From NCBI RefSeq assembly GCF_006345805.1, contig NC_043014.1, forward strand, positions 5,642,001-5,706,000: 64,000 nt of DNA. The letters run 5' to 3'. The stretch is from Octopus sinensis (taxonomy: Eukaryota). The notes beneath the pieces are model-generated. The model was not told the DNA's origin and made no database searches. It saw only the letters and a program-made list of their open reading frames with translations. The translations under genes and the position numbers were made by a program. Shown here piece by piece: positions 32,414 to 63,905 of the stretch (positions are counted from its first letter, which is position 1; every line of letters starts with the position of its first letter).

Positions 32414-32444
<31 letters not shown>

Positions 32445-36652: not shown

Positions 36653-36704
<52 letters not shown>

Positions 36705-37158: not shown

Positions 37159-37190
<32 letters not shown>

Positions 37191-37200
37191 TCTCTATCTA

Positions 37201-37232
<32 letters not shown>

Positions 37233-37964
37233 ACACACACAGACAGACAGATTACTTCCTATCTACATGTTACAAGAGACGTTAAGGCGACTATAGTAAA
37301 CAATCAATATGAAACTGCCTAAGAGCATATATATATATATATATATAGATCAAAATAAAATAAAAACATGATGCGAAGGATTCAGCGGTACATATGTTTC
37401 GGGCCTTTATTAGACAGATTTATAACAATGCATAATGTATGTCTGTGGCCTTCTTCAGCCGCGCACAACAGGTTCCACAAGGACATGTGTTACATCAAAT
37501 ATTCTTGGTTGGGGATGCAAATCCTCTCATTCGCGTGCGACATAATGCGGCAGCAGCATAGAATTGAAGCGTCCATCTCTTTCTTCTCTCAATGTAGAAT
37601 ATTCTACATTGAGAGAAGAAAGAGATGGACGCTTCAATTCTATGCTGCTGCCGCATTATGTCGCACGCGAATGAGAGGATTTGCATCCCCAACAGAATAT
37701 TTGATGTAACACATGTCCTTGTGGAAAGTTGTGCCCGGCTGAAGAAGGCCACAGACATACATTATGCATTGTTATAAATCTGTCTAATAAAGGCCCGAAA
37801 CATATGTACCGCTGAATCCTTCGCATCATGTTTTTATTTTATTTTGATCTATATATATATATATATATATGCTCTTAGGCAGTTTCATATTGATTGTTTA
37901 CTATAGTCGCCTTAACGTCTCTTGTAACATGTAGATAGGAAGTAATCTGTCTGTCTGTGTGTGT

Positions 37965-37996
<32 letters not shown>

Positions 37997-38006
37997 TAGA
38001 TAGAGA

Positions 38007-38038
<32 letters not shown>

Positions 38039-39285
38039 TAGAGAGGGGGTGTATGTGCGCGCGCGATCTCGCCTTGTGTCTGTGTCGACTTATGCCGGAG
38101 ACTAATGAATGACTTTCCTAGACATACTTTTATATATTTACGTATTTATGCCAGAAACTTGCCCCGCCCAAAATCGAATGTTCGTTTCTAAAACCAATGA
38201 TATTAAGGCTACACAGTGTGGGCGTGTACTAAGTAACGCTAATGCTTATCATTGGATGCAGATGATTTGACGCTATCATCTAATAGACACACCCACACAC
38301 ATTCACACTAACAATGATATCACCTTCATATATATGTTTACATTTACATATATATATATATATTAATATAGGGGCGGGGACTCGTTATTGTAGAATCGCG
38401 GTTTCGATTCTGAGACCGGGTTTGTGAGTGTTTATTGAGCGAAAACACCTAAAGCTCCACGAGGCTCCGGTAGGTGTGGTGGCGATATATATATATTATA
38501 TTATATATATATATATATATATATAATATAATATATTATATATATATATATATGAATTGTGTTTTTATATTATAGTAACTGATGAGATACTCATATTATT
38601 TGAGGGAGTGAATTCCAAAACTTACAAACAAAAAAACACAATTTAGAAATACTAAATCAAATTTTACACAATATAATATCACGTGATCACGTGACCGACC
38701 AGACCATCAGATGTTGTTACACATCGCTGGTCACAATGCGTTCGCATTGTTTTTGCCTTCGAACGACGCCACCCCGCTGGCTAATCGAGCAGGCCAACTG
38801 AAGAAAGAGTGGGAGAAAGAGTGGTGAAAGGGTACAGCAGGGATCGCCACCCCCTGCCGGAGGTTCGTGGAGCTTTTTAGGTGTTTTCGTTCAATAAACA
38901 CACACAACGCCCGGACTGGGAATCGAAACCGCGATCCTCCGACCGCCAGTCCGCTGCCCTAACCACTGGGCCATTGGGCCTCCACACAATATAATATATA
39001 TATCAAAAATTAGAAAAAAACCACCTTTTAGCAATTCAAAATGAAAAATTTTCTAGAATGTGTAATTTAATTGTTCATTTTGAATTGATAAAAGGTGTTT
39101 TAAGTTGTGTTCTTGAGCAAAACACTTCATTTCACGTTGCTCCAGTCCACTCAGCTGGCAAAAATGAGTAACGCTGCGATGGACTGGCGTCCCCTCCAGT
39201 TGGGGGGGGGGCGCACATACGCCACAGAAACCGGGAAACCGGGCCCATGACCCTGGCTAGGATTTAAAACGGTGCATTTATTATA

Positions 39286-39330
<45 letters not shown>

Positions 39331-43554: not shown

Positions 43555-46500
43555 TGGAGCCAACTCTGACCGATTGTTGCCAGCCATTCTCTGCGGCAAT
43601 ACTGACGGACACCACTAAACACACCATCCAAATCGAGGTATACAACCTTTTAGTTCAGTGTCTTCGCGCCGCACCATCATCGTCGAAGTCCTCCGTGGGA
43701 CGGCTTAATCCGATGCGGCCCAGGAAGTGGACCTAACTCAGACCGATTGTTGCCAGCCATTCTCTGCGGCAATACTGACGGACACCACTAAGCACACCAT
43801 CCAAATTGAGATATACAACATTTTAGTTAAGTGTCTTCAGGCCGCACCCTCACCGCCGAAGTCCTCCGTGGGACGGCTAAAACCGATGCGGCCCAGGAAG
43901 TGGAGCCAACTCTAACCGATTGTTGCCGGCCATTCTCTCCCCCAATACTGACGGAAACCACTAAACACACCAACCAATTGAAGTATACAACCTGTTTGTT
44001 CAGTATCTTAGCGCCTCACCCTCATTGGCGAAGTCCTCCGTGGGACGGCTAAAACCGATGTGGCCCGTGAACTAAAGCCAAGTCTGATCGATTGTTGCTG
44101 GCCATTCTCCGCGGCACTACAGACGGACACCACAAAACACACCATCCAAATTGAGATATACAACATTTTACTTCAGTCTCTTCCCGCCGCACCCTCATCG
44201 CCGAAGTCCTCCGTGGGACGGCTAAAACCGATGTGGCCCGTGAAGTAAAGCCAACTATGATCGATTGTTGCCGGCCATTCTCCGCGGCAATACTGACGGA
44301 TACCACTAAACACACCATCCAAATTGAGATATACAACATTTTACTTCAGTCTCTTCCCGCCGCACCCTCATCGCCGAAGTCCTCCGTGGGACGGCTAAAA
44401 CCGATGTGGCCCGTGAACTAAAGCCAACTATGATCGATTGTTGCTGGCCATTCTCCGCGGCAATACAGACGGACACCACAAAACACACCATCCAAATTGA
44501 GATATACAACATTTTACTTCAGTCTCTTCCCGCCGCACCCTCATCGCCGAAGTCCTCCGTGGGACGGCTAAAACCGATGTGGCCCGTGAACTAAAGCCAA
44601 CTATGATCGATTGTTGCCGGCCATTCTCCGTGGCAATACTGACGGATACCACTAAACACACCATCCAAATTGAGATATACAACTTTTTACTTCATTCTAT
44701 TCCCGCCGCACCTTCATCGCCGAAGTCCTCTGTGGTACGGCTAAAACCAATGTGACCCGGGAAGTGCAGCCAACACTGATCGATTGTTGCCGGCCATTCT
44801 CCGCGGCACTACAGACGGACACCACTAAACTCACCATCCAAATCGAGATATACATCTTTTTACTTCAGTCTCTTCCCGCCGCACCGTCATCACCGAAGTC
44901 CTCCGTGGGACGGCGAAAACCGATGTGGCCCGCGAACTAAAGCCAACTCTGATCGATTGTTGCCGGCCATTCTCCGCGGCACTACAGACGGACACCACTA
45001 AACACACCATCCAAACTGAAATATACAACTTTTTACTTCAGTCTCTTCCCGCCGCACCCTCATCGCCGAAGTCCTCAGTGGGACGGCTAAAACCGATGTG
45101 GCCCGTGAAGTAAAGCCAACTATGATCGATTGTTGCCGGCCATTCTCCGCGGAAATACTGACGGACACCACTAAACCCACCATCCAAATTGAAGTATACA
45201 ACCTTTTAGTTCAGTGTCTTCGCGCCGCACCCTCATCGCCGAAGTCCTCCGTGGGACGGCTAAATCCGATGCGGCCCAGGAAGTGGAGCCAACTCTGACC
45301 GATTGTTGCCAGCCATTCTCCGAGGCAATACAGACGGATACCACTAAACCCATCATCCAAATTGAGGTATACAACCTTTTAGTTCAGTGTCTTCGCGCCG
45401 CACCGTCATCGCCGAAGTCCTCCGTGGGACGGCTAAAACCGATGCGGCCCAGGAAGTGAAGCCAACTCTGACCGATTGTTGCCGGCCATTCTCCGAGGCA
45501 ATACAGACGGATACCACTAAACCCACCATCCAAATTGAGGTATACAACCTTTTAGTTCAGTGTCTTCGCGCCGCACTGTCATCGCCAAAGTCCTCCGCAG
45601 GACGGCTAAATCCGATGCGGCCCAGGAAGTGGAGCCAACTCTGACCGATTGTTGCCAGCCGTTCTCCGAGGCAATACAGACGGATACCACTAAACCCATC
45701 ATCCAAATTGAGGTATACAACCTTTTAGTTCTGTGTCCTCGCGCCGCACCCTCATCGCCGACGTTCTCCGTGGGACGGCTAAAACCGATGCGCCCAGGAA
45801 GTGCAGCCAATCCTGACCGATTTATGCCGGCCATTCTCCGCGCCAATACAGACGGACACCACAAAACAAACTATCCAAATCGAGGTATACAACTTCTAGT
45901 TCAGGGTCTTCGAACCACAAACACTCATCACCGAAGACCTCCGTGGGACGGCTAAATCCGATGCGGCCCAGGAAGTGGAGCCACTCTGACCGATTGTTGC
46001 CGGCCATTCTCCGCGGCAATACTGACGGACACCACTAAACACACCATCCAAATTGAGGTATACAACCTTTTAGTTAAGTGTCTTCAGGCCGCACCCTCAC
46101 CGCCGAAGTCCTCCGTGGGACGGCTAAAAACGATGCGGCCCAGGAAGTGGAGCCAACTCAGACCGATTGTTGCCGGCCATTCTCCGCGCCAATACTGACG
46201 GACACAACTAAACACATCATCCAAATTGAAGTATACAACCAGTTTGTTCAGTATCTTAGCGCCGCACCCTCATTGGCGAAGTCTTCCGAGGAACGGCTAA
46301 AACCGATGCGGCCCTAGAAGTGGAACCAACTCTGACCGATTGTTGCCGCCATTCTTCGCGGCAACACTGACGGACACCACTAAACACACCATCCAAATTG
46401 AGGTATACAACCTTTTGGTTCAGTGTCTTTGCACCGCACCCACATCGCGAAAGTCCCCGTGGGACAGCTAAAACCGATGCGGCCCAGGAAGTGGTGCTAA

Positions 46501-49500
46501 CACTGACCGATTGTTGCCGGCCATTCTCCACGGCAACACTGACGGACACCACTAAACACACCATCCAAATTAAGGTATACAACCTTTTAGTTAAGTGTCT
46601 TCATCCCGCACCCTCACCGCCGAAGTCCTCCGTGGAACGGCTAAAACCGATGCGGCCCAGGAAGTGTAGCAAATTCTGACCGATTGTTGCCGGCCATTCT
46701 CTGCCCCAATACTGACGGAAACCACTAAACACACCATCCCAATTGAAGTATACAACCTCTTTGTTCAGTATCTTAGCGCCTCACCCTCATTGGCGAAGTA
46801 CTCCGTGGGACGGCTAAAACCGATGCGGCCCAGGAAATGGAGCCAACTCTGACCGATTGTTGCCGGCCATTCTCCGCGGCAATACTGACGGACACCACTA
46901 AACACACCATACAAATTGAGGTATACAACCTTTTAGTTCAGAGTCTTCGCACCGCACCCTCATCACCGAAGTCCTCCGTGGGAAGGCTAGAACCGATGCG
47001 GCCCAAGAAGTGGAGCCAACTCTGACCGATTATTGTCCGGCTATTGTCCGCGGCACTACAGACGGACACCACTAAACACACCATCCAAATTAAGGTACAC
47101 AACCTTTTAGTTCAGTGTTTTCTCGCCGCACCCTCATCACCGAAGTCCACTGTGGGACGGCTAAAACCGATGCGGCCCAGGAAGTAGGGCCAATCCTGAC
47201 CGATTGTTGCCAGCCATACTCCGACCCAATACTGACGGACACCACTAAACGCACCATCCAAATTGTAGTATACAACCTTTTAGTTCAGTGTCTTCGCGCC
47301 GCACCCTCATCGCCAAAGTCCTCCGTGGGACGGCTAAAACCGATGCGGACCAGGAAGTGGAGCCAACTCTGATCGATTGTTGACGGCCATTCTCTACGGC
47401 AATACTGACGGACACCACTAAACCCACCATCCAAATTGAGGTATACAACATGTTTGTTTAGTGTCTTCGCGCCGCACCCTCATCGCCAAAGTCCTCCGTA
47501 GGACGGCTAAAACCGATGCGGCCCAGGAAGTGGAGCCAATTCCGACCGTTTTTGACGGCCATTCTCCGCGCCAATACAGTCGGACACTACTAAACACATC
47601 ATCCAAATTGAGGTATACAACCTTTTAGTTCAGTGTTTTCGCGCCGCATCCTCATCACCGAAGTCCTCCGTGGGAAGGCTAAAACCGATGCGGCCCAGGA
47701 AGTGGAGCCAAATTTGACCGATTGTTGCCGGCCATTCTCCGCGGCAATACTGACGGACACCACTAAACGCACCATCCAAATTGAGGTATACAACCTTTTA
47801 GTTCTGTGTCCTCGCGCCGCACCCTCATCGCCGACGTTCTCCGTGGGACGGCTAAAACCGATGCGCCCCAGGAAGTGCAGCCAATCCTGACCGATTTATG
47901 CCGGCCATTCTCCGCGCCAATACAGACGGACACCACAAAACAAACTATCCAAATCGAGGTATACAACCTTCTAGTTCAGGGTCTTCGAACCAAACACTCA
48001 TCACCGAAGACCTCCGTGGGACGGCTAAATCCGATGCGGCCCAGGAAGTGGAGCCAACACTGACCGATTGTTGCCGGCCATTCTCCGCGGCAATACTGAC
48101 GGACACCACTAAACACACCATCCAAATTGAGGTATACAACCTTTTAGTTAAGTGTCTTCAGGCCGCAACCTCACCGCCGAAGTCCTCCGTGGGACGGCTA
48201 AAACCGATGCGGCCCAGGAAATGGAGCCAACTCTGACCGATTGTTGCCGGCCATTCTCCGCGCCAATACTAACGGACACCACTAAACACACCATCCCAAT
48301 TGAAGTATACAACCTGTTTGTTCAGTATCTACGCGCCGCACCCTCATCGGCAAAGTCCACCGTGGGACGGCTAAAAACGATGCGGCCCAGGAAGTGGAGC
48401 CAACTCAGACCGATTGTTGCCGGCCATTCTCCGCGCCAATACTGACGGACACAACTAAACACATCATCCAAATTGAAGTATACAACCTGTTTGTTCAGTA
48501 TCTTAGCGCCGCACCCTCATTGGCGAAGTCTTCCGAGGAACGGCTAAAACCGATGCGGCCCTAGAAGTGGAACCAACTCTGACCGATTGTTGCCGCCATT
48601 CTCCGCGGCAATACTGACGGACACCACTAACACACCATCCAAATTGAGGTATACAACCTTTTGGTTCAGTGTCTCTGTCTTCGCGTCTAATCCTCATCGC
48701 CGAAGTCCTCCGTGGAACAGCTAAAACCGCGGCCCTGGAAGTGGAGCCAACTCTGACCGATTGTTGCCGCCATTCTTCGCGGTAACACTGACGGACACCA
48801 CTAAACACACCATCCAAATTGAAGTATACAACCTTTTAGTTAAGTGTCTTCATCCCGCACCCTCACCGCCGAAGTCCCTGTGGGACGGCTAAAACCGATG
48901 CGGCCCTAGAAGTGCAGCCAACTCTGACCGATTGTTGCCGGCCATTCTCCGCGGCAATACTGACGGACACCACTAAACACACCATACAAATTGAAAGTAT
49001 ACAACCTGTTGTTCAGTATCTTAGCGCCGCACCCTCATTGGCGAAGTCTTCCCGAGGAACGGCTAAAACCGATGCGGCCCTAGAAGTGGAGCCAACTCTG
49101 ACCGATTGTTGCCGCCATTCTTCGCGGTAACACTGACGGACACCACTAAACACACCATCCAAATTGAGGTATACAACCTTTTGTTCAGAGTCTTCGCACC
49201 GCACCCTCATCACCGAAGTCCTCCGTGGGACGGCTAAAACCGATGCGGCCCAGGAAGTGTAGCAAATTCTGACCGATTGTTGCCGTCCATTCTCTGCCCC
49301 AATACTGACGGAAACCACTAAACACACCATCCCAATTGAAGTATACAACCTGTTTGTTAAGTATCTTAGCACCTCACCCTCATTGGCGAAGTACTCCGTT
49401 GGACGGCTAAAACCGATGCGGCCCTAGAAGTGCAGCCAACTCTGACCGATTGTTGTCGGCCATTCTCCGCGGCAATACTGACGGACACCACTAAACACAC

Positions 49501-52500
49501 CATACAAATTGAGGTATACAACCTTTTAGTTCAGAGTCTTCGCACCGCACCCTCATCACCGAAGTCCTCCGTGGGAAGGCTAGAACCGATGCGGCCCAAG
49601 AAGTGGAGCCAACTCTGACCGATTATTGTCCGGCTATTGTCCGCGGCACTACAGACGGACACCACTAAACACACCATCCAAATTAAGGTATACAACCTTT
49701 TAGTTCAGTGTTTTCTCGCCGCACCGTCATCACCGAAGTCCACTGTGGGACGGCTAAAACCGATTCGGCCCAGGAAGTGGGGCCAATCCTGACCGATTGT
49801 TGCCGGCCATACTCCGACCCAATACTGACGGACACCCCTAAACGCACCATCCAAATTGAGGTATACAACCTTTTAGTTCAGTGTCTTCGCACCGCACCCT
49901 CATCACCGAAGTCCTCCGTGGGACGGCTAAAACCGATGCGACCCAGGAAGTGGAGCCAACTCTGATCGATTGTTGACGGCCATTCTCGCGGCACAATACT
50001 GACGGACACCACTAAACCCACCATCCAAATTGAGGTATACAACCTGTTAGTTCAGTGTCTTCGCGCCGGCACCCTCATCGCCAAAGTCCTCCATAGGACG
50101 GCTAAAACCGATGCGGCCCAGGAAGTGGAGCCAACTCTGACCTTTTTTGACGGCCATTCTCCGCGCCAATACAGTCGGACACTACTAAACACATCATCCA
50201 AATTGAGGTATACAACCTTTTAGTTCAGTGTCTTCGCGCCGCATCCTCATCACCGAAGTCCTCCGTGGGAAGGCTAAAACCGGTGCGGCCCAGGAAGTGG
50301 AGCCAAATTTGACCGATTGTTGCCGGCCATTCTCCGCGGCAATACTGACGGACACCACTAAACGCACCATCCAATTTGGGGTATACAACCTTTTAGTTCA
50401 GTGTATTCGCCCCGCACCCTCATCGCCAAAGTCCTCCGTTGGACGGCTAAAACCGATGCGCCCCAGGAAGTGCAGCCAATCCTGACCGATTTATGCCGGC
50501 CATTCTCCGCGCCAATACAGACGGACACCACAAAACAAACTATCCAAATCGAGGTATACAACCTTCTAGTTCAGGGTCTTCGAACCAAACACTCATCACC
50601 GAAGACCTCCGTGGGACGGCTAAATCCGATGCGGCCCAGGAAGTGGAGCCAACACTGACCGATTGTTGCCGGCCATTCTCCGCGGCAATACTGACGGACA
50701 CCACTAAACACACCATCCAAATTGAGGTATACAACCTTTTAGTTAAGTGTCTTCAGGCCGCACCCTCACCGCCGAAGTCCTCCGTGGGACGGCTAAAACC
50801 GATGCGGCCCAGGAAATGGAGCCAACTCTGACCGATTGTTGCCGGCCATTCTCCGCGCCAATACTAACGGACACCACTAAACACACACCATCCCAATTGA
50901 AGTATACAACCTTTTAGTTCAGTGTCTTCGCGCCGCACCCTCATCGGCAAAGTCCACCGTGGGACGGCTAAAAACGATGCGGCCCAGGAAGTGGAGCCAA
51001 CTCAGACCGATTGTTGCCGGCCATTCTCCGCGCCAATACTGACGGACACAACTAAACACATCATCGAAATTGAAGTATACAACCTGTTTGTTCAGTATCT
51101 TAGCGCCGCACCCTCATTGGCGAAGTCTTCCGAGGAACGGCTAAAACCGATGCGGCCCTAGAAGTGGAACCAACTCTGACCGATTGTTGCCGCCATTCTC
51201 CGCGGCAATACTGACGGACACCACTAAACACACCATCCAAATTGAGGTATACAACCTTTTGGTTCAGTGTCTTCGCGTCTAATCCTCATCGCCGAAGTCC
51301 TCCGTGGAACAGCTAAAACCGATGCGGCCCTGGAAGTGGAGCCAACTCTGACCGATTGTTGCCGCCATTCTTCGCGGTAACACTGACGGACACCACTAAA
51401 CACACCATCCAAATTGAAGTATACAACCTTTTAGTTAAGTGTCTTCATCCCGCACCCTCACCGCCGAAGTCCTCTGTGGGACGGCTAAAACCGATGCGGC
51501 CCTAGAAGTGCAGCCAACTCTGACCGATTGTTGCCGGCCATTCTCCGCGGCAATACTGACGGACCGCACTAAACACACCATCCAAATTGAGGTACACAAC
51601 CTGTTTGTTCAGTGTCTTCGCTCCGCACCCTCATCGCCGAAGTCCTCCGTGGGACGGCTAAAACCGATGCGGCCCAGGAAGTGGAGCCAACTCTGACCGA
51701 TTGTTGCCGGCCATTCTCCGCGCCAATACTGACGGACACTACTAAACACACCATCCAACTGAGGTATACAACCTGTTTGTTCAGTGTCTTCGCGCCCCAC
51801 CCTCATCGCCGAAGTCCTCTGTGAAACGTTCTAGAACCGAAGCGGCCCAGGAAGTGGAGCCAACTCTGACCGATTGTTGCCGGCCATTCTCCGCGGCAAT
51901 ACTGACGGTCACCACGAAACACACCATCCAAATTGAGGTATACAACATGTTTGTTTAGTGTCTTCGCGCCGCACCATCATCGCCGAAGTCCTCCGTGGGA
52001 CGGCCTAGAATCGAAGCGGCCCAGGAAGTGCAGCCAAATCTGACCGATTGTTGCCGGCCATTCTCCGCTGCAATACTGACGGACACCACTAAACACACCA
52101 TCCAAATCGAAGTATACAACCTTTTAGTTCAGTGTCTTCGCGCCGCACCCTCATCGTTGAAGTCCTCTGTGGGACGGCTAAATCCGATGCGGCCCAGGAA
52201 GTGGAGCCAACTCTGACCGATTGTTGCCAGCCATTCTCCGCGGCAATACTGACGGACACCACTAAACACACCATCCAAATTGAGATATACAACTTTTTAC
52301 TTCAGTCTCTTCCCGCCGCACCGTCATCACCGAAGTCCTCCGTGGGACGGCTAAAACCGAATAGGCCCGTGAACTAAAACCGGCTAATCTCCCCGGCACT
52401 ACAGACGGATACCACTAAACACACCATCCAAATTGAGATATACAACTTTTTAGTTCAGTGTCTTCGCGCCGCACCCTCATCGCCGAAGTCCTCGGTGGGA

Positions 52501-54866
52501 AGGCTAAAACCGATGTGACCCGGGAACTGGAGCCAACTCTGATCGATTGTTGCCGGCTATTCTCCGCGGCACTACAGACGGACACCACTAAACACACCAT
52601 CCAAATTGAAGTATACAACCTTTCAGTTCAGTGTCTTCGCGCCGCACCCACATCGCCAAAGTTCTCCGTGGGACGGCTAAAACCGATGCGGCCCAGGAAG
52701 TGAAGCCAACTCTGATCGATTGTTGCCGGCCATTCTCCACGCCCACACTGACGGACAGCACTAAACACACCATCCAAATTGAGGTACACAACCTGTTTGT
52801 TCAGTTGCTTCGCGCCGCACCCTCATCGCTGAGTCCGCCGTGGGACGGCTAAAACCGATGCGGCCCAGGAAGTTGAGCCAACTCTGACCGATTGTTGCCG
52901 GCCATTCTCCGCGGCAATACTGACGGACACCACTAAACACACCATCGAAATTGAAGTATACAACCTTTTTATTCAGTATCTACGCGCCGCACCCTCATCG
53001 GCAATGTCCACCGTGGGACGGCTAAAACCGATGCGGCCCAGGAAGTGGAGCCAACTCAGACCGATTGTTGTCGGCCATTCTCCGCGGCAATACTGACGGA
53101 CACCACTATACACACCATCCAAATTGAGGTATACAACCTTTTAGTTCAGTGTCTTCGCGTCTAATCCTCATCGCCGAAGTTCTCCGTGGAACAGCTAAAA
53201 CCGATGCTGCCCAGGAAGTGGAGCCAACTCTGACTGATTGTAGCCGGCCATTCTCCGCGGCAATACTGACGGACACCATTAAACACACGATACAAATTGT
53301 GGTATGCAACCTTTTACTTCAGTGTCTTCGCCCAGCACCCTCATCTCCGAAGTCCTCCGCGGAACGGCTAAAACCGATGCGGTCCTGGAAGTGGAGCTAA
53401 CTCTGACCGATTGTTGCCGGTCATTCTCCGCGGCAATACTGACGGACACTACTAAACACACCATCCAACTGAGGTATACAACCTGTTTGTTCAGTGTCTT
53501 CGCGCCCCACCCTCATCGCCGAAGTCCTCCGTGAAACGTCCTAGAACCGAAGCGGCCCAGGAAGTGGAGCCAACTCTGACCGATTGTTGCCGGCCATTCT
53601 CCGCGGCAATACTGACGGACACCACTAAACACACCATCCAAATCGAAGTATACAACCTTTTAGTTCAGTGTCTTCGCGCCGCACCCTCATCGTCGAAGTC
53701 CTCCGTGGGACGGCTAAATCCGATGCGGCCCAGGAAGTGGAGCCAACTCTGACCGATTGTTGCCAGCCATTCTCCGCGGCAATACTGACGGACACCACTA
53801 AACACACCATCCAAATTGAGATATACAACATTTTACTTCAGTCTCTTCCCGCCGCACCGTCATCACCGAAGTCTTCCGTGGGACGACTAAAACCGAATAG
53901 GCCCGTGAACTAAAACCAAGTCTGATCGATTGTTGCCGGCCATTCTCCGCAGCACTACAGACGGATACCACTAAACACACCATCCAAATTGAGATATACA
54001 ACATTTTACTTCAGTCTCTTCCCGCCGCACCCTCATCGCCGAAGTCCTCTGTGGGAAGGCTAAAATCGATGTGACCCGGGAACTGGAGTCAACTCTGATC
54101 GATTGTTGCCGGCTATTCTCCGCGGCACTACAGACGGACACCACTAAACACACCATCCAAATTGAGATATACAAAATTTTACTTCAGTCTCTTCCCGCCG
54201 CACCCTCATTGCCGAAGTCCTCCGTGGGACGGCTAAAACCGATGTGGCCCATGAACTGAAGCCAACTCTGATCGATTGTTGCTGGCCATTCTCCGCGGCA
54301 CTACAGACGGACACCACTAAACACACCATCCAAATTGAGGTATACAACCTTTCAGTTCAGTGTCTTCGCGCCGCACCCACATCGCCAAAGTTCTCCGTGG
54401 GACGGCTAAAACCGATGCGGCCCAGGAAGTGGAGCCAACTCTGACCGATTGTTGCCGGCCATTCTCCACGTCCACACTGACGGACACCACTAAACACACC
54501 ATCCAAATTGAGGTATACAACCTTTTAGTTCAGTCTCTTCCCGCCGCACCGTCATCGCCAAAGTCCTCCGTGGGACGGCTAAAACCGATGTGGCCCGTGA
54601 ACTGAAGCCAACTATGATCGATTGTTGCCGGCCATTCTCCGCGGCACTACAGACGGACACCACTAATCACACCATCCAAATTGAGGTATACAACTTTTTA
54701 CTTTAGCCTTTTCGCACCGATCCCTCATCGGCGAAGCTCTCCGCGGGACGGCTGAAATCTCTGGAGCCATCTCTGACCGATTGTTGCCGGCCATTCTCCG
54801 CGGCCATTCAGACGGACACCACTAAACACACTTACCCAAATTGAGGTATACATGTTTTTAGTTCAC
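43555..54866. repeat. 173-bp tandem satellite, ~65 monomers, with higher-order repeats
   Basis: Consensus ggagccaactctgaccgattgttgccggccattctccgcggcaatactgacggacaccactaaacacaccatccaaattgaggtatacaaccttttagttcagtgtcttcgcgccgcaccctcatcgccgaagtcctccgtgggacggctaaaaccgatgcggcccaggaagt; ORF-track periodicity of 173. Confidence 0.97.
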
Positions 54867-55783
54867 CTATTCTTTCGTTGTTTAATGCCATCTTCCTCTG
54901 TCTTGTTTTTCCCTATTGAAGTAATTTTATTATTTTTAGTTTCTGTGGTTTATTTCAGATTTCACTTAAATTTTCATCGGCGAAATTTCGCTTTAATTGT
55001 TTGATAATTTAAAATTTTATACTTTTGCTCTTTTTACTTAAATTATCTAAACGAGATTTTGTATTTAGAATGCACAGATTGTAAATTATGCGATAAAACG
55101 AGAGATTAATTGAAGTAAAAGCAATAAATGAATTTTATCAAATTTTCCATCTCAATATCTGAAAATATTGTGATTATTGTTTAATATCAAGTTTCCCTGA
55201 CCCGATTGTGCAAATAATTTGAGCAGGATTCTTAGCGTTTGGATAAAATTACACAGAAAAGTGTTATCTGATCGTATGGAGAAGAAAACAAACATACATA
55301 TTTACATACATGCATTTATATATATACATGTATATAAATACATGTATAACTACATACATATATAAGTACATACACACACATATTTATACACGCACATTCA
55401 CACATATGCTCACACATACACTTACAAATGCTGTGTGCTTGTTGTCAGAGTTTCGGTAAACAAACGAGTCAATATGACCTCCACCCAGAAACATTTCATG
55501 TAAAATGTTGAAAGATATTTAAGTAATAAAATGCGTTTCTGAAGAATCATAACTGGCAAGTAAGTTAAATATCCTCACACGCGCGCGAATACATGTAAAC
55601 GTTAGTATAGGAGGGGTAGGAGTGTCTGTCTGGTAAGTTGCTTGTTTACGAACCACATGGTTCCGGGTTCAGTCCCACTGCGTGGCACCATGGGCAAGTG
55701 TCTTCTATTATATCCTCGGGTCGACCAAAGCCTTGTGAGTGGATTTGATAGACGGAAACTGAAAGAAGCCCGTCGTATATTTG

Positions 55784-55846
<63 letters not shown>

Positions 55847-56022
55847 ATGTATGTATGTATGTGTGTGTGTATGTGTTTGTGTGTCTGTGTTTGTCCCTCC
55901 TACATCGCTTGACAACCGATGTTGGTGTGTTTATGTACCCGTAACTTACCGGTCAGGTAAAAGGGACCGATATAATAAGTACTAGGTTTAAGTCCTGCGG
56001 TCGATTTGCTCGACTAAAGGCG

Positions 56023-56574
56023 CCGAGCAAGTCGGGCGGGACGTCGACGAGAACGGCGGCCACGCCGCCGCCGTTGCAACGTCCCAGAATGGAAATTCCG
56101 CCGGTGACGCTGCCGCTCGACGAGCGGCACGGTGAACGCCGAGCTAAGGCATGCGCTTTAAGAGGGAGACACTTTTGGAAAACAACTCTAGTTCGGTTAC
56201 GGTTCCGGCATAGAGGCGTTCAGCCGTTATCGCTTAGAGGCAGCCTGGCACCATGGTGAGTGCTCAAACAGTTGCTCCTATCCTGCAGTTTCTCTCGCAC
56301 TGAACGGGATAGTCGTAGCTGAGTTGGCGTTGCCGGTGCCCGCCTAAGGTCGGCGGAAGCGTCGGCGGTAGTGAAGGACGACGCGTGAGTGCGCCACCTC
56401 CGTGGCGGCGCACCGTACCCCCGACGCGACTCGGGTCACTGCGTATAGCGTAATGCATCGGTAGGATAAAACTAACCTGTCCCATGACGGCCTAGACAAC
56501 TGACGCTCCATGTTATTGAGTGAACAATCCAACATCGAAGGATCAAAAAGCGACGCCACTGCGAACGCTTGGCC

Positions 56575-56617
<43 letters not shown>

Positions 56618-56816
56618 CGGCGGATGCATAGCTCATCGCTGTTCGGAAAGAATTGATGAGCCACGCTCATCGAAATCGAGCAAGCTTTTGTCGTTTTGCT
56701 CAACGTGTAGTTTCCATCCACGCTGAGCACGCCTTGGGTCACCTATGCTACCGTTTGACATACGTACCGCCCCAGTCAGATTCCCCGACCGACACTGTTC
56801 TTGACTAAGGGTCGCG
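56023..56816 (-). rRNA. 28S rRNA pseudogene, 3' part (domains V-VI), truncated
   Basis: Reverse-complement hallmarks cgaaggatcaaaaagcgac, gccacaagccagttatccctgtggtaacttttctgacacc, taccgccccagtca. ~40-nt peptidyl-transferase-centre deletion at 56533/56534; mutated sarcin-ricin loop; fused to SINE-B at 56022. Confidence 0.93.
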
Positions 56817-59410
56817 ACTAAGAGATCTCCCACTGCCCCACAAAGGAAGGGTGGTAAATTACATAAGTGAAATCCGAGCCGGTAATTTATATTTGTGATC
56901 GGTTCCACACCCTAAACTAAGTCTCTATGACTCCCCGATTCAGTCCGATGGATCTAATGTTGAGGGCTAATCCCTCAGCGTGTTGTAGGTGCTCAACATA
57001 GCAGTTCTGCTAAATAGCTGTCAAAATGACCGGTCTCTAGTGCTCAAGGCGTCCAGTGGGTTGCTCGCAGACGAGCACCAGGCGCCACAGGCATCAACAG
57101 GGAGACTGTATACATCCACCGGCCGCCCAAGCTCTTCTCTCAGAAGAGGAATGAGCGGCCGGTATTTGTACACTTTTTCTAGAGCTACCTCCCTCAAGAC
57201 AGCTCCCTATTCGAAACGAACGGTCACATCAACGACTACCACCTTCTCATGACTGCTAAAAACAAGATCTGGTATAAGTGTGGTGCCCTCCACATGATAG
57301 GAGGGCTCCACACTGACCCTCAAACTGTGGGTCACGGCTTCTCGTGCTACCAAGCCACATAATTTATTATAATTCATTATAATTTATTATACTTGGCAAG
57401 TCTGAGCTTCTTAAGAGGAGCATAGTCTCCACTGACATGCGATATAGTCTCCGTTCCTACTCTACAGCTTGGACACGTGGAGACACCACGGCCACCCCGT
57501 GTCAAGGCTTCACGAGTGGGAAAACATTGGAGGGCATCATGAGTAAACCCAAGAAGCATCCCTCCATTATCTATTATAAAAGAATTCCCCTGCGTGAGAC
57601 CATAAAGAATCTCGGTAGGGAGTACTGCTGTAGCAAGAAGAATTATTGTTGGGGTTTCAGTGGAACCCGGCATATTTTATGAATATACCGGGACACCTGC
57701 TCCACTGAATCTAAATCGAATTCCGGGTATAAAATTTAAGTCCCAGTTAGGACAGCTTATGTTCAGGCTGGACTTCACACAAATCGATACCAGTGAGACT
57801 CGGTGGAGTTTCATTATTGTCAAGGTGGGATTTGCCCCAGCCCCTGATGGAGAACAACGCGCACTTGCCGATATTGATCGCCAGCCCGACCGTACGATAG
57901 AACTCCAGATATCAAACCATAAGTGCCTGAAGCCCATCGCACGAACTCGAGACTAGTACCAAATCGTCAGCGTACGCAAGGCCTGCCACCATAGACCTCT
58001 TAACACTGAGACCGTCGCTACTAGGCAAAATGTCTAGCAGAGGATGGGCGAAAGCGCATTTCTTTGCCTAACACCACGCTGAATCTCTATGGGCTCGCTT
58101 AATTGGCTCCCAACCGAGAATCTGGTTACACTGCCTTCATATACCCCCTCCACGAGCCTTATTAGGTGCTCGTGGAAGCTCAGTCTTCCAACCCCCGCAT
58201 ACACAAGTGAGTGCGGGACCGTGTCGAAGGCTTTTACTAGGTCTATGAAAGCGACTTCCAGCAGCGATATTCTTGACCATGACGGCCACCCCATCGATCG
58301 GCTGACTAGTTGTCAACCTCGATGAATCTCCGTTGGGCAGGATTCAGTGAAGTTACCTGAAGCATTCTCCTGGCGACCCTCTTCGAAAACAGACGATACG
58401 CTGCACAGCATATCGTCAGTGGTTGCCAATTAGAGGTGACCATGGGATCATCTGTCCTTTCGAAATCAGGACGGATCTTCCTTGCTTCAGGACATCGGGA
58501 AATTTCCCGGCCAGCAACATGCTGTTGTACAGGTTTGTGAGGATGATGGGGTCCATGGACTTGATTTCTCGAACAGTAAGTTCATCAGGACCCTCCACTG
58601 AAGATGGATTCATTCCTCGTCGGCTCTTCTTAATTTCCTTCATAGTGGAAAGCCTCACAAAAGACCCTTATCAACTATGGAGGAGACTGATTACTCCGAA
58701 AGGTCGACTTCAGAGCCAGAGACGGAATAGCTCTATAGCGGGCATGGGAATAAGACACCCATGCTCTGAATCCTCACCCATTACAGCTGCTTGGAACATT
58801 TTCCTGTATTTATGTTGAAACCGCTTCATGTTGTTACACCTCCCACACCTACCGGCCACCTCCTCTCTACGTGCCTTACAATGCTCCACCCAGTCCTCAA
58901 CCTTATTTCCGAAGAAATCCCAAACCCCGGGTGATGCGTCCTCCGTGGACTCCAACAGGAACTCGGAGAAGACGGCCTCCCACCGGGAGTGACGGGGAAG
59001 TGCAGCATCGAAGAACAAGTCTCACCAGTTGTTATTTAGAGAAGACTCACCTTCGCGTTGAGTTCTCACCTGAGATTTCTTAGCCAGGCCAACCCTCTTA
59101 GTACCCACCTGTTTAGGTGTTTTATTGAGTAGGTACTGTGTAATGGCCACGTTGATCCTTTTGCACCCAGCTGCTGCCAGCTCAGCTTCCCTCTCGACGA
59201 GTATTGCTACTTCCTCTATGGACCAGCAACCTCTGCTGACATGGCCTGAGGCCGTCGCAGAAGCATCTCCCCTTGCATACTTTATCACCATTTCTTCCTT
59301 GTGCTGTGCGATCCTATGCGCATTAACTGCGAGAGGATGCCCGTGGCGTCAAAAAAGAACGGCTGCAGTGGTCGCAATGGAAGGGAAGCTGAACAGAGCG
59401 GGATGTATCA

Positions 59411-59640
59411 GAGCTGGCAGAATCGTTAGCACGCCGGGCGAAATGCTTAGCTGTATTTCGCCCATCGCTACCTTCTGAGTTCAAATTCTGCCGAGGTCGA
59501 CTTTGCCTTTCATCCTTTCGGGGTCGATAAATTAAGTACCAGTTACGCACGGGAATCGATGTAACCGACTTATGCCCTTTGTCTGTTCTTGTTTGTCCCC
59601 TCTATGTTTAGCCCCTTGTGGGCAATAAAGAAATAAGAAA
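59411..59640 (+). mobile_element. SINE family A inserted in the R2 ORF between its zinc fingers
   Basis: gagctggcagaatcgttagc...gggcaataaagaaataagaaa, antisense to R2. Confidence 0.92.
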
Positions 59641-59811
59641 CCAATGCGCTACTACAGCGTGGCATCTCATAAACTGGAACGGCCCGCTTTCCCTATCGCA
59701 TTTCTCTCACTTGTATACCGGCTTTATTCCATGCGTATACTCCATTTGTTCCTCCATCGTCGGGGGGGGGGGGAGATGAGGACTTACGATGCCAACCGGG
59801 CCCGATTGCAA

Positions 59812-59961
59812 CCAGGAGCGCGCCTAGTTCCCGCCGCCGGACGGACACCCGTCGAGTTCGGGTTCGGGAATAGCAACCCGATTCTCTTTAGATGCGAAGC
59901 CGGCAGCTTGCTTGCGTGCCGGTCTGCGTGCTTGCGTGACGGATCCGACGCCTTTCGTGAA
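59812..59961 (-). other. 150-bp 28S fragment embedded in the R2 5' region
   Basis: 146/150 identical to 61430-61579, same orientation. Confidence 0.93.
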
Positions 59962-60374
59962 CAAGGAACCATCCGTACAGCCAAGGAACGGCCCAACATA
60001 TGACCATAACACCCTAATCGAGTTCAAACCCCACAAACAATAAAGGGTGACCCCCGCCCCCCAGAGTAAGCTACGGGTCCGTTTGGAACAACCGCAACAT
60101 TGCGCCAATAGAGCACAACCGACTATTAACTAGTCCACACGGGACGCGTGGTGGTGAGTCCATCGGTGCCCTAGCTAATCTTAGCGGGGAGGTCCGTGCT
60201 TCTCAGTCAGGATTGCCCATATCTCTGCAAGGTTTCCAACCACCAAGTGGCATCGTTTTGAGAGAAGTGGAACACATTTAGTTTGTCCAAAGTGAGATGG
60301 CCGATCCGGCATGATTGCACGTACTGACATAGTCCCTCCCACGGACGTAAGCCCTCTGAGAGCGGCAAGGAAGT

Positions 60375-62210
60375 GAGTCATAGTTATTCACGCCGTTTAC
60401 CCGCTATTTGGTTAAATTTCTTCAATTTGACATTCAGAGCACTGGGCCGAAATCACATCGCGTTTGTGCGGATAACCGATGCTCTGTTTTAATTAGACTG
60501 TCGAATTCTCCCCGTCCATACCAGTCCCGAGTCGACCGTTCGCCGCTGGCGGAACGCCTGCCATGAGTCCGTGGTATGACAACCGATCCCGCGCGAGGAG
60601 GAGTCAGGCCGCGAGCACCGACGCGACAGCGAGTCCGAAGCCGTGCCGCTCAACGGCATCTCGAGTGAGGAGCCGTGTTGTTCGCGCCCACTACGCCCCA
60701 AGAGCCCTGTATAAAATCGTGTACCGCCAGACAACGCGCTGGGAGGCGAGGAGCACTCTCGCGAGAGAAGGCCACACGCGGATCCGGCGGCGGCGACCAC
60801 CACGTGCGCTCTCCACTGCGCCAAGAAGGCTCGGCGTAGGCAACGGGACCGAACGCAGCCGCAGACACCGTGCAGGGAAAACGGTCCCCGTTAGCCGAAT
60901 ATGCGACCACACAGCGGCGCGAAACGGGTTATTCGTGGTGGCGGCGGCGACGGCCGGAACGGTGACCTGGATGGCGAGTCTGACGCCAACGCTACAGCGC
61001 CAGACCGATCCGCCGTTTCGCGTGAAGACGTGCTCCGGCGCCCGTCGGCGCTACGCCGAGCGAATGGGGAAATGTTCACGCGGGTGCGCGGTGACACACA
61101 CCGACCGATCCGCTCCTCGAAGTCAATCCTTTTTCCGAAATTAAGAATCCACTTTGCCGACTTCCCTTACCTACATAGGCGCTATCGACGAGGGGCTGTA
61201 CATCTCGGTGACCGGCTGCGGATGCGTTACGGACCTGGATTTTCCAGGACTGCCGAGAACGCGCCGGACGCCACCCGAGACGCGGAGCTCTGCAGGTATC
61301 ATATCCGTACCGCCAGATGAGCCGATTGCACGGACGCGGTCCTTTACGAAAGAACTCCCAGTAACGCTCCTGGCTCGCTTGCGTTACCGCTGCTTCGCCC
61401 AGGCGCCGACTTCGACGACGGATGCCCTGCCAGGAGCGCGCCTAGTTCCCGCCGCCGGACGGATACCCATCGAGTTCGGGTTCGGGAATAGCAACCCGAT
61501 TCTCTTTAGATGCGAGGCCGGCAGCTTGCTTGCGTGCCGGCCTGCGTGCTTGCGTGACGGATCCGACGCCTTTCGTGAAAGCTTTCGCCCGCTTCTTCCG
61601 ACCGACTGACCCGTGCTCGACCGCCGTTGACACGGAACACTTCTCCAATTCGGTCTTCGAATGTCTCGTTCCACCGAGATCTGCACCCGCAGTCGGCTTC
61701 ACTCGTTCTCACGCCCGCAACTTCCATGCATGCCGCAGCGCCCTCCTACTTGCCCGGACATTGGAAAGACGCCCTGCCGGAGAACACGCAACCTGTCTCA
61801 CGGCCGCCCCGGCATCGGTCACTCACTCCAGCTCCATCCGTTTTCGGGGTCTGTCGATTCGGCAGGTAAGTTATTGCACACGCCTTAACAGATTCCGACT
61901 TCAGTGTCCACCGTCCTGCAGTCTATATCGACCGAGACCCTTTCAGGGATCTAATGGGCGAAGCCTAGGACACCTTATCCGGACGTTCAGTTCATCCCAC
62001 ATCACCAGTTCTGCTTACCAAATGTGGCCCACTAGGCAACGTGCATTCGTTGGTCGCAATGGCTACGATATACGGCTGCCTCCGATCGGGAGAGGAGCGG
62101 CACGCTTTCCCCGTTCCGAGTTCAAGAGTAGATCGTGGCCGTCAGCGTCCCCGGGCCTCCAGTCGTTTGCTTTACCGGACAGAATTGCGCGTTGTTTTCC
62201 CGCTGACGCT

Positions 62211-62249
<39 letters not shown>

Positions 62250-63392
62250 AACGGCTCGATTGGTCTTTCGCCACTACACTCGGTTCCGACGATCGATTTG
62301 CACGTCAGAAGCGCTTCAGATTTCCACCAGTGTTTCCTCTGGCTTCGTCCCGACCGGGCGTGGATCGCCATCTTTTGAGTCCCCGGCCGCATCATACACC
62401 TGAGTAGGAGCGGCAACGCAAGCGCCCGGAAATGCAGACGTGAACGCGCGTACTCGACCCGGGACCGATGCCTCGAGGCACTGCGCGCACGCTGGCGGTG
62501 ATGACGACGCCCATAGCCGCCGCGACGACCGCCGCACGGGGAGGACGTGTGACGTTATTGCTTTGACTGTGTCATCGGAGTTCGTGAAGTGAAAGGCTGC
62601 AACGACTCGCAGTGGACTGGGACTCCTCTGTCCGTGTTTTAAGACGGGCTGGGTAGGTTGCCGATGCTCGTCGCTGAGCGGCAGGTACGCGCGGATTTTC
62701 GCGAGGGAGGCAACATGGCGAGGTGCGTTAGCCCATCTCCGTCGGTTAGCCGTGCCATCGATTTCGTGGAGCGACGGGCTCGGTCGAGAGAAGTGCGTCG
62801 GTCCTGCCCCGAGCCAGCGGAAGTCAGCAGCGGCGTGGCGCTGCCCTGCGACCTGCGGACTCCACGCAACTAGCGGCTCGACGGGAACTGGTCGTGACGA
62901 CAGATCAGGGTGTAAGTGCGTCCGATGCCGGCGTCCCGGAAATCGAGCGCCGACAAGGCAGCAGACCACCGCCCGCGGAACGAGTTTCCTCCAACGGTGT
63001 GACTTTCCACAGACTGAGTCCCCACGAGAAGCAGTGGACTAAGTCCCCGCGCGATCGCAGTGAGTGGTCCTACCCGTTTACCCCTGGGCGGTTTCTCGAG
63101 CTCTTGAACTCTCTCTAAAGTTCTTTTCAACTCTCCCTCGCGGTATTTGTCGGCTATCGAACTCGTCGTCGTATTTATCCTTGGATGGAGCTTACCACCC
63201 ACTTTGGGCTGAGTTCTCAAGCAACCGGACTCTCAGGCCGAAGAAAAACGCCGATCACCGCCGGCTCTGAATGGGACTGCTACACATCGTGCATCACATC
63301 TCTCGACGACGAGATTCGGCGTTGGGCTTCTCCCAGTTCACTTGCCGTTACTTAAGGAATCCCGGTTGGTTTCCCGGTTGGGAATCCTGGTT
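60375..63392 (-). rRNA. 28S rRNA pseudogene, 5' part
   Basis: Conserved blocks (ctgagggaaacttcggagggaaccagctacta, ccgtgttttaagacggg, gacattcagagcactggg, cttaccaccc..ttgggctg) carry substitutions. The 5'-terminal ACCCGCTGAATTTAAGCATAT region is absent. Confidence 0.93.
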
Positions 63393-63740
63393 GAAGATCC
63401 GCAGAGAGGAACGCCGACCGACGGCGGCGGCAAGTGGTGACCACAGAAGGGAGACAGAGGACAGGAGAAGACGAGACACACCGGACGGGCGGTACCGCGT
63501 GCGAAACCGTGCCTCACTTCCGTTCACTCTTCATCGTCGTGTTCTTCAGCGTTTCTGCTGTGCTCCGCTACCTAGTCCGCCGCGGCGCTGCGCAACGATG
63601 ACGGATTGAGCGGCGTGCGCTAGTCAGGCGGGAAGATGGATTGGAAGGATGAGCTGCGGTGACATTGAGCGGTCCGGATGGAAGTGTCCGTCGCCGCTTC
63701 TTTTCCTTCCGCTTCCCCTGCGTGCCCTTTCCTGCGATTC
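63393..63740 (-). other. ITS2-like spacer
   Basis: GC-rich sequence between 5.8S and 28S. Confidence 0.7.
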
Positions 63741-63905
63741 CGCCTTCCGTCCGGATGGGGCCCCTGGGACGATGGGATCCCGGGGTCGCGATGTGCGTTC
63801 AAGTTGTCGATGTTCACTGTGTCCTGCAATTCACATGAGTTCACGCGGTTATACCGGTATAACCACGTGAACTCGACAAGCCGGATGATCCCTCGTCCAG
63901 AGTTT
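63741..63905 (-). rRNA. 5.8S rRNA pseudogene
   Basis: Reverse complement atgtgaattgcaggacacagtgaacatcgacaacttgaacgcacatcgcg. The GATGAAGAACGCAG motif is replaced by a 38-nt palindrome. Confidence 0.9.

What the first reader, a model, noticed from the sequence alone, without database searches (positions are those of the whole stretch)
43555..54866. Unrecognised 173-bp GC-rich satellite flanking the end of an rDNA unit
Seen: ~65 head-to-tail monomers, richer in GC and CpG than the flanks, ending ~1.15 kb from the truncated 28S 3' end, with no 18S beyond it. Each monomer has two dyad symmetries (ttgccg..cggcaa; gccg..catcg..gtcc/ggac..cgatg.cggc) and no CENP-B box. Inference: either expanded intergenic-spacer subrepeats of a terminal rDNA unit or a (peri)centromeric satellite at an NOR boundary. 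I do not recognise it as a described family.
Basis: partly seen in the sequence, partly recalled or inferred. Interest (0 to 1): 0.75.

Follow-up and report, generated by a model that had tools for sequence, protein, structure and literature searches.

The report
Local 173-bp repeat beside dead rDNA
An octopus genome carries an 11-kb run of about 65 copies of a 173-base unit that occurs only once at the matching place in a related octopus, next to an old, broken ribosomal RNA gene; it looks like an ordinary local repeat expansion, not a centromere or a working rDNA spacer.

Summary
The array is real: window 43555-54865, period 173 bp, 65.6 head-to-tail copies, all on one strand and found nowhere else in the window. 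The neighbouring 28S (minus strand, 56171-63400) is a decayed pseudogene. Universally conserved motifs are mutated, its 3' end is missing, and a degenerate R2 retrotransposon sits at the canonical R2 site.

The window comes from an Octopus species. A collagen-C4-like exon at 16 kb is 97% identical to an O. bimaculoides protein, and that species' locus is colinear with the window. At the matching position O. bimaculoides has one copy of the unit (about 184 bp), followed by the same right flank at 86% identity. That copy lies outside all window monomers.

Array monomers are only 86% alike. Edge monomers keep outgroup-like bases, and the core holds a 15-monomer block duplication at 97%. The dyad symmetries exist but show no covariation and fold no better than shuffled sequence. 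There is no CENP-B box, and CpG is not enriched beyond base composition.

Best reading: a locus-specific tandem expansion of spacer-side DNA beside an orphan rDNA relic, with no sign of function. Whether the unit descends from the true octopus IGS, and its genome-wide copy number, could not be tested.

The parts
43555..54865 (+). 173-bp tandem array: 65 full or near-full monomers plus a final 100-bp partial. Edge-type monomers are numbers 3-9 and about 51-64; core-type monomers lie between them.
   Evidence: TRF. nhmmer gives 66 hits, all on the + strand. Mean pairwise identity is 86% and mean identity to consensus is 92%. Edge monomers share O. bimaculoides bases at positions 95, 102, 158 and 169.
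46669..51512 (+). Internal 15-monomer (about 2.6 kb) block duplication: monomers 19-31 against 34-46, mean 97% identity.
   Evidence: The monomer identity matrix shows a lag-15 run. Near-identical ORFs lie at 47898-48236 and 50493-50831.
54866..56170 (.). AT-rich spacer between the array and the 28S relic. The first 384 bp are orthologous to O. bimaculoides. The rest holds microsatellites and a dispersed repeat (about 55605-55952).
   Evidence: Window 54766-55249 aligns to L009 33107-33832 at 86.3% over 437 positions, with one 273-bp insert present only in O. bimaculoides. TRF rows at 55292-55894. The dispersed repeat also matches L009 and other window sites.
56171..56790 (-). 28S pseudogene, 3' block (Rfam model about 2700-3165). 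The 3'-terminal ~235 model positions are missing.
   Evidence: cmscan 139 bits, model 2781-3401, with the last 232 positions aligned to 8 nt. SRL reads AGTGCGAGAGAAAC at 56301-56288; the PTC motif has 7/64 mismatches. A conserved motif matches at 56786-56754.
56800..60367 (-). Degenerate R2 non-LTR retrotransposon in the same orientation as the 28S, at the canonical R2 target. Boundaries are approximate.
   Evidence: A raw frame translation matches PDB R2 proteins 9nl2/9nl3/9dou (E 2.6e-31) in Myb, N-terminal, RT and endonuclease stretches. Pfam RVT_1 hits fall in two frames. The 28S motif GCGGGAGTAACTATGACTCTCTT ends at 60371. There are at least 2 frameshifts and at least 5 in-frame stops.
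59326..59601 (-). SINE-like insertion inside the R2 5' region.
   Evidence: It has the same translated signature as the SINE arrays at 29-31 kb.
60368..63400 (-). 28S pseudogene, 5' block (Rfam model 1 to about 2310).
   Evidence: cmscan 797.7 bits, model 1-2310. The 5'-terminal conserved 30 positions are reduced to 1 nt; conserved motifs are mutated.
63741..63904 (-). 5.8S rRNA relic. ITS2 lies at 63401-63740 and the start of ITS1 at 63905-64000.
   Evidence: cmscan 38.8 bits, below the gathering score of 42.

Best explanation
The array is a locus-specific ("private") tandem expansion of a 173-bp stretch of GC-rich DNA. It lies 1.3 kb downstream of an ancient, R2-invaded, decayed 28S pseudogene, an orphan rDNA relic, in an Octopus genome.

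Shown: a congener (O. bimaculoides) carries the same sequence as a single unit with the same right flank. All window monomers are closer to one another than to that unit. Edge monomers keep outgroup-like bases. The core carries derived variants and a recent 15-monomer block duplication.

Inferred mechanism: a first duplication arose between the short imperfect direct repeat that brackets the unit in the one-copy state (CCTT..CTTCA). The array then grew by unequal sister-chromatid exchange or replication slippage, mostly from the middle and partly in multi-monomer blocks. A later deletion or rearrangement replaced the original left flank.

I infer no sequence-specific function. The array is most likely neutral, possibly heterochromatic, DNA beside a silent rDNA relic.
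For: - Organism and orthology: an exon at 16045-16533 is 97% identical to an O. bimaculoides protein. Its locus L009 (CM046620.1, 41.33 Mb) is colinear with the window at 81-93% identity.
- One-copy state: L009 33026-33209 equals monomer positions 93-173 followed by 1-103, with no N gap nearby. The right flank is shared at 86.3% identity.
- Outgroup position: the O. bimaculoides unit is 86% identical to the consensus and 80% on average (maximum 84%) to single monomers, while monomers average 92% to the consensus. It is roughly equidistant from all monomers, including the positional counterpart.
- Edge monomers 3-9 and 51-64 share O. bimaculoides bases at positions 95, 102, 158 and 169.
- Block duplication at lag 15, 97% identity.
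- The direct repeat CCTT..CTTCA lies at both ends of the unit in L009, and the array junction equals right-end left half plus left-end right half.
- No copies elsewhere in the window or in the other octopus loci fetched from O. bimaculoides, O. vulgaris and O. sinensis.
- No structure signal.
- A second array in the window (29002-31415, SINE-derived) also has an empty site in O. bimaculoides. Such local amplifications therefore recur in this lineage.
Against: - Only one outgroup is available, and it comes from a short-read-based assembly that could have collapsed an array.
- A contraction by unequal exchange would restore exactly the same one-copy structure, so "never amplified" and "lost" cannot be told apart in O. 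bimaculoides.
- Monomer divergence from the consensus (8%) is similar to the per-lineage species divergence (about 7.5% from the flank). Amplification could therefore be as old as the split.
- Genome-wide copy number was not measurable here. The absence test covers only the few other octopus loci fetched.
- The window's left flank is not orthologous, so the left junction gives no support.
- The window could in principle be a paralogous segment and not an ortholog.
Confidence: 0.6

Rival explanations
1. The array is what remains of genuine IGS subrepeats. Functional octopus rDNA units carry the same 173-bp subrepeats (enhancer- or terminator-type spacer repeats). This relic unit kept and drifted its copy of them, and O. 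bimaculoides contracted its copy to one.
For: - Position: the array is on the 3' (spacer) side of the 28S, 1.3 kb away, where IGS subrepeats usually begin.
- Its GC (52.5%) resembles the rDNA (55%) and not the 36% genome background. A GC-rich patch surrounds the unit in L009 as well.
- The decay of the monomers (8% from the consensus) is of the same order as that of the 28S relic (about 12% in conserved motifs).
Against: - O. bimaculoides has one unit at the orthologous site.
- No 18S, promoter or ETS follows the array within 43 kb.
- The 28S relic lacks its own 3' end, so continuity from the gene into the IGS is broken.
- The O. bimaculoides unit is not nested among the monomers.
- The functional IGS could not be examined.
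Confidence: 0.15
2. The array predates the split of the two octopus lineages. The single copy in O. bimaculoides is an artefact of short-read assembly collapse, or a secondary contraction. The array would then be an old shared feature and not a lineage-specific expansion.
For: - GCA_001194135.2 contains many N gaps in this region. I recall, from my own knowledge and not checked here, that it is Illumina-derived.
- Monomer-to-consensus divergence (8%) is about equal to the per-lineage species divergence.
- Most of the 24 differences between the O. bimaculoides unit and the consensus could be changes specific to the O. bimaculoides lineage (about 13 expected).
Against: - Sequence is contiguous through left flank, unit and right flank with no gap, and no monomer-monomer junction is present.
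- Monomers 14% apart would not collapse cleanly.
- The unit is equidistant from all monomers instead of closest to the positional counterpart.
Confidence: 0.15
3. The array is one block of a genome-wide (peri)centromeric or NOR-adjacent heterochromatic satellite family.
For: - The monomer length (173 bp) is in the nucleosome-sized range typical of centromeric satellites, and copies are head-to-tail.
- C-bands in octopods cover centromeres and terminal NORs (PMC6160780).
Against: - The array is only 11.3 kb and is bounded by non-satellite DNA on both sides.
- A gene exon lies 27 kb away.
- The orthologous position is 41.33 Mb on a 47.89-Mb chromosome, whereas Ag-NORs are terminal in the octopods studied.
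- The congener has one copy.
- The unit is absent from the other octopus loci fetched.
- Homogeneity is low and only one partial higher-order block is present.
- No protein-database or metagenome trace.
Confidence: 0.05

Closest known systems
IGS-derived satellites (e.g. the tomato rDNA-spacer-derived satellite, PMC2679016; As51 satDNA colocalised with 45S rDNA in Characiformes, PMC13170303)
   Same: A tandem array physically linked to the spacer side of an rDNA unit. It is GC-rich relative to the genome and is amplified independently of the genes.
   Different: Those families share demonstrable sequence with the functional IGS and occur at many or large loci. Here homology to a functional IGS is untested, only one 11-kb locus is known, and the adjoining rDNA is a dead relic.
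Orphan or pseudogenised rDNA units carrying R2 insertions (R2-inserted 28S genes of arthropods and other animals; dispersed rDNA pseudogenes)
   Same: The 28S is interrupted at the canonical R2 site by an R2-clade element in the same orientation. The unit has escaped concerted evolution and is decaying.
   Different: That literature describes the gene relic, not a satellite grown next to it. Here the relic is only the neighbourhood of the array.
Locus-specific macrosatellites and minisatellites born from single-copy DNA by microhomology-mediated tandem duplication and unequal exchange
   Same: A congener has the one-copy state. Short direct repeats bracket the unit. Edges look older and the core younger. 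Block duplications are present. Copy number differs 1 against 65 between relatives.
   Different: No population data on copy-number polymorphism are available. At 14% pairwise divergence the array is older and more diverged than typical hypervariable minisatellites.
Alpha-satellite-like centromeric repeats (about 171 bp)
   Same: Monomer length of about 171-173 bp, head-to-tail arrangement, and a partial higher-order block.
   Different: No CENP-B box. The array is kilobase scale, not megabase scale. It is known at a single locus, has low homogeneity and has one copy in a congener. No sequence similarity was tested or claimed.

Membership tests
rDNA IGS subrepeats | Lies between the 28S 3' end and the promoter/18S of the next unit | tested here: not met
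   The array is on the 3' side of a 28S relic, but no SSU rRNA or further rDNA follows in the 43.5 kb beyond it. The 28S relic has lost its own 3' end.
rDNA IGS subrepeats | Present in the spacers of intact, functional rDNA units | not testable with these tools
   No functional octopus rDNA unit could be fetched. The protein-search routes were exhausted.
rDNA IGS subrepeats | Homogenised by concerted evolution (copies nearly identical) | tested here: not met
   Mean pairwise identity is 86%.
rDNA IGS subrepeats | Tandem state shared by the orthologous spacer of a related species | tested here: not met
   O. bimaculoides L009 has about 1.06 copies. Caveat: this is a short-read-based assembly.
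Centromeric / pericentromeric satellite | Long arrays (hundreds of kb) forming the bulk of a region | tested here: not met
   The array is 11.3 kb and has both ends inside the window.
Centromeric / pericentromeric satellite | High genomic copy number, on several chromosomes | tested here: inconclusive
   The unit is absent from the other O. bimaculoides, O. vulgaris and O. sinensis loci fetched and from JGI metagenomes. No whole-genome or read search was possible.
Centromeric / pericentromeric satellite | CENP-A / kinetochore association | not testable with these tools
   This needs CUT&Tag, ChIP or FISH.
Centromeric / pericentromeric satellite | CENP-B box (only some families have one) | tested here: not met
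   0 matches to TTCGNNNNANNCGGG in the window.
R2 retrotransposon (for the insert in the 28S) | R2-type protein: Myb/zinc-finger N-terminus, RT, C-terminal restriction-like endonuclease | tested here: met
   Four matched stretches to PDB R2 proteins, E 2.6e-31. RVT_1 fragments. A C2H2-like motif in frame 1.
R2 retrotransposon (for the insert in the 28S) | Inserted at the conserved 28S target (..CTCTTAAGG/TAGC..) in the orientation of the rRNA | tested here: met
   The upstream 28S motif ends at 60371 and the Rfam model reaches about 2310 there. The strand is the same. The downstream ~300 nt of 28S are deleted, so only the 5' junction is seen.
rRNA pseudogene | LSU homology combined with loss of universally conserved elements | tested here: met
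   809 bits over a 3401-position model. The SRL has 2/14 changes and the PTC motif 7/64; the 5' and 3' termini are deleted. The reference motifs were typed from general knowledge of eukaryotic LSU rRNA.

The most novel reading that the evidence does not exclude
The 173-bp unit is a piece of ancestral octopus rDNA spacer that was caught seeding a new satellite. In the source species it has spread beyond this locus and marks NOR-adjacent or pericentromeric heterochromatin. That would make it the first sequence-defined cephalopod satellite whose one-copy ancestral state survives in a congener.
Probability: 0.07. Interest if true: 0.6.

Novelty: new member of a known kind. Interest (0 to 1): 0.3.

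Why it matters
If the reading holds, this locus is a clean, datable example of how a tandem array arises from one-copy DNA. A congener shows the one-copy state. The bracketing short repeat is visible. The array shows old edges, a young core and block duplications. It also documents an R2-bearing rDNA relic in an octopus. I found no paper describing octopus satellite families or octopus rDNA spacers in the searched library. The practical value is for annotation: the array should not be taken as a centromere or NOR-boundary marker without copy-number and FISH data.

Tried and rejected
- Translated a satellite ORF and searched 5.8 billion proteins to find the repeat in other assemblies: no hit.
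- Searched paper full texts for six sequence strings from the satellite and the SINE: none found.
- Scanned JGI metagenomes for a conserved 20-mer: 8 loci, all bare 20-mer chance matches.
- Searched with the R2 translation to reach related rDNA contigs: one distant fish hit only.
- Tried to reach the O. bimaculoides sequence beyond L009 through paralogous collagen-like genes P0003, P0013, P0016 and P0040: all lie on the wrong side.
- The O. vulgaris and O. sinensis loci reached through P0004 and P0005 showed no copy of the unit. The O. vulgaris locus matched the window only through dispersed repeats and a paralogous exon at 80%.
- Rfam on three related loci (L009, L014, L015): no rRNA.
- Structure hypothesis for the dyads: rejected.
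- Short higher-order repeat: rejected, only a lag-15 block duplication.
- CpG-island reading: rejected, observed/expected is about 1 everywhere.
- Molecular-clock dating of the amplification: abandoned. Flank divergence, unit-to-consensus divergence and monomer-to-monomer divergence give inconsistent ages.
- Paper searches for octopus satellites, IGS or rDNA FISH returned only Ag-NOR and C-banding work.
Full report
**1. Observation**

TRF finds a single array at 43555-54865 with period 173, 65.6 copies and 86% matches. A profile made from 20 monomers recovers 66 consecutive + strand copies and nothing else in the 64-kb window. GC is 52.5% in the array against 36% to the left and 37% in the spacer to the right. 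CpG observed/expected is about 1.0 in all compartments, so there is no CpG enrichment beyond base composition. No CENP-B box is present.

**2. The rDNA next door is a relic**

- Rfam places a eukaryotic LSU rRNA on the minus strand at 56171-63400. It scores only 809 bits for a 3401-position model. The 5.8S at 63741-63904 is below its gathering score. The 28S 3' end therefore faces the array, 1305 bp away.
- Universally conserved elements are damaged:
  - The sarcin-ricin loop reads AGTGCGAGAGAAAC.
  - The peptidyl-transferase motif has 7/64 mismatches.
  - The 5'-terminal 30 positions are reduced to one base.
  - The last ~235 model positions are missing.
- The reference motifs were typed from general knowledge of LSU rRNA. 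The Rfam alignments show the same pattern.
- Between the two recognisable 28S blocks lies a degenerate R2 element in the same orientation.
  - The blocks are model 1 to about 2310 at 63400-60368 and model about 2700-3165 at 56790-56171.
  - A raw frame translation matches solved R2 proteins (9nl2, 9nl3, 9dou; E 2.6e-31) in four stretches. RT fragments lie in two frames, and there are several in-frame stops.
  - The 28S sequence immediately upstream of the canonical R2 target ends at 60371.
  - A SINE is inserted at 59326-59601.
  - Window 59450-60250 is not recognisable as rRNA on its own, as expected for an R2 5' region.
- No SSU rRNA occurs in 1-43554.

**3. Organism and orthologous locus**

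- An exon with a splice-acceptor-like start and a stop codon (16045-16533) is 97% identical to an O. bimaculoides "short-chain collagen C4" protein. O. vulgaris, O. sinensis and Argonauta paralogs follow at 75% or less.
- That gene's locus is L009: GCA_001194135.2, CM046620.1, 41,334,321-41,368,157, on a 47.9-Mb chromosome. It is colinear with the window at 81-93% nucleotide identity.
- The source is therefore an Octopus species other than the sequenced O. bimaculoides. Less likely, it is a diverged paralogous segment.
- The other paralogs of the gene cluster all lie on the far side.

**4. One copy in the congener**

- L009 33026-33209 matches monomer positions 93-173 followed by 1-103 (E 9e-19 and 5e-24). 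No N gap lies nearby.
- It runs straight into the same right flank as in the window. Window 54766-55249 aligns to L009 33107-33832 at 86.3% identity over 437 positions. The only interruption is a 273-bp palindromic insert present in O. bimaculoides alone.
- L009 ends about 900 bp short of the position of the 28S relic. Whether O. bimaculoides shares the relic is therefore unknown.
- The left flank is not conserved. L009 carries a LINE fragment and other sequence there.
- In L009 the unit is bracketed by an imperfect short direct repeat..ATCCTTCTTCAGT.. on the left and ..AACCTTTTACTTCACT.. on the right. The monomer-monomer junction of the array (CCTTTTAGTTCAGTGTCT) is the right-end left half joined to the left-end right half.
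- The unit is absent from the other octopus loci fetched.

**5. Anatomy and history of the array**

- Mean pairwise identity is 86%, and mean identity to the consensus is 92%.
- The O. bimaculoides unit is 86% identical to the consensus and 80% on average (maximum 84%) to single monomers. It is roughly equidistant from all of them, including the last partial monomer that abuts the shared flank. It therefore behaves as an outgroup to the array.
- At positions 95, 102, 158 and 169 the O. bimaculoides base is shared by monomers 3-9 and 51-64, the two edges. The core carries the alternative base.
- Edge monomers from opposite ends are each other's nearest relatives. Monomers 19-31 and 34-46 form a 15-monomer block duplication at 97% identity.
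- This is the expected picture for growth from the interior by unequal exchange, partly in multi-monomer steps.
- Dating is unreliable. Flank divergence, unit-to-consensus divergence and monomer divergence give inconsistent ages. A contraction by unequal exchange would recreate the same one-copy structure. "Never amplified" and "contracted or collapsed" therefore cannot be separated for O. bimaculoides.

**6. No sign of sequence-specific function**

- The dyads (GTTGCCG/CGGCAAT; GCCG..CATCG..GTCC/GGAC..CGATG.CGGC) are present in the consensus.
- The monomer folds no better than shuffles (z = -0.46).
- Across 62 distinct monomers, pairing is 88.5% against 88.2% in shuffles, with one compensatory change against 2.0 expected.
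- The dyads are partly broken in the O. bimaculoides unit.
- ORFs in the array are short and have no database relatives.

**7. Interpretation**

- The best-supported account is a locus-specific tandem expansion of spacer-side DNA beside an orphan, R2-bearing rDNA relic (confidence 0.6).
- Two rivals cannot be excluded with these tools: descent from true IGS subrepeats (0.15), and an ancestral array collapsed or contracted in O. bimaculoides (0.15).
- The genome-wide centromeric or NOR-boundary satellite reading is poorly supported (0.05). The array is small and bounded, a gene lies close by, and the orthologous site is interstitial. Ag-NORs are terminal in the octopods examined cytologically (PMC6160780).
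- A second, SINE-derived 171-bp array in the same window also has an empty site in O. bimaculoides. Local amplification of ~170-bp units therefore recurs in this lineage.

**8. Novelty**

I found no paper describing octopus satellite families or octopus rDNA spacers. The sequence is therefore undescribed as far as I can tell. The phenomenon itself is well known. I rate it a new member of a known kind, of modest interest (0.3). Its main use is as a tidy example of array birth with the one-copy state preserved in a relative.

Noticed in passing
window 29002-31415 (direct repeats at 28987-29001 and 31416-31430); L009 26375-26389: A 171-bp (338-bp dimer) tandem array, ~14 copies, of a tRNA-derived SINE-like unit sits between 15-bp direct repeats GATATTTCTAAGTTG. 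O. bimaculoides has the uninterrupted empty site. This is a second lineage-specific ~170-bp array within 25 kb of the first, apparently an insertion followed by in-situ amplification.
   Followed up: partly
window 17093-17649: Three tandem 184-bp copies of the same SINE-like unit (94% matches).
   Followed up: no
window 35885-39309: A near-perfect 3.4-kb palindrome. The arms are about 35885-37469 and 37728-39309, 92-98% complementary, with a 258-nt spacer. It lies 4 kb left of the satellite. O. bimaculoides has N gaps at the matching place.
   Followed up: partly
window 56800-60367 (-): A degenerate R2 retrotransposon at the canonical 28S site. It has frameshifts, in-frame stops and a SINE inside it. 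About 300 nt of 28S after the target are deleted. A protein search found no close R2 relative (best hit a fish protein at 37% identity).
   Followed up: yes
window 16045-16533 (+), with upstream exons probably between 2.7 and 13.3 kb: The terminal exon of a short-chain collagen C4-like gene, 97% identical to an O. bimaculoides protein. In that species it is the last member of a tandem paralog cluster (CM046620.1, 41.33-41.48 Mb).
   Followed up: partly
window 24245-25135 (+) and 23848-24069 (-): A mariner/Mos1-type transposase remnant (HTH_48, E 1.3e-8) with frameshifts. Next to it is a weak GIY-YIG fragment of the kind found in Penelope-like elements.
   Followed up: partly
window 750-1983, 5989-6362, 7036-8289: Very long microsatellites: (TATG)~312, (ACT)~125 and (ATT)~419. 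Dozens of (AT)n and (TG)n tracts occur throughout the left 43 kb.
   Followed up: no
window 28930-28941: A short interstitial telomere-like motif (GGTTAG x2, within GGTTAGGGTTAGGGTTA) just left of the SINE array.
   Followed up: no
L009 33346-33618 and L009 31432-32070 (-): Features present only in O. bimaculoides next to the single 173-bp unit: a 273-bp palindromic MITE-like insert in the right flank, and the C-terminal part of a LINE reverse transcriptase (212-aa ORF) in the left flank.
   Followed up: partly
window 55605-55952 and many other sites (e.g. 6380-6790, 23260-23680, 31530-31930, 32240-32660): A dispersed ~400-bp repeat, 90-95% identical to copies in the O. vulgaris locus L014. 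One copy sits in the spacer between the satellite and the 28S relic.
   Followed up: no
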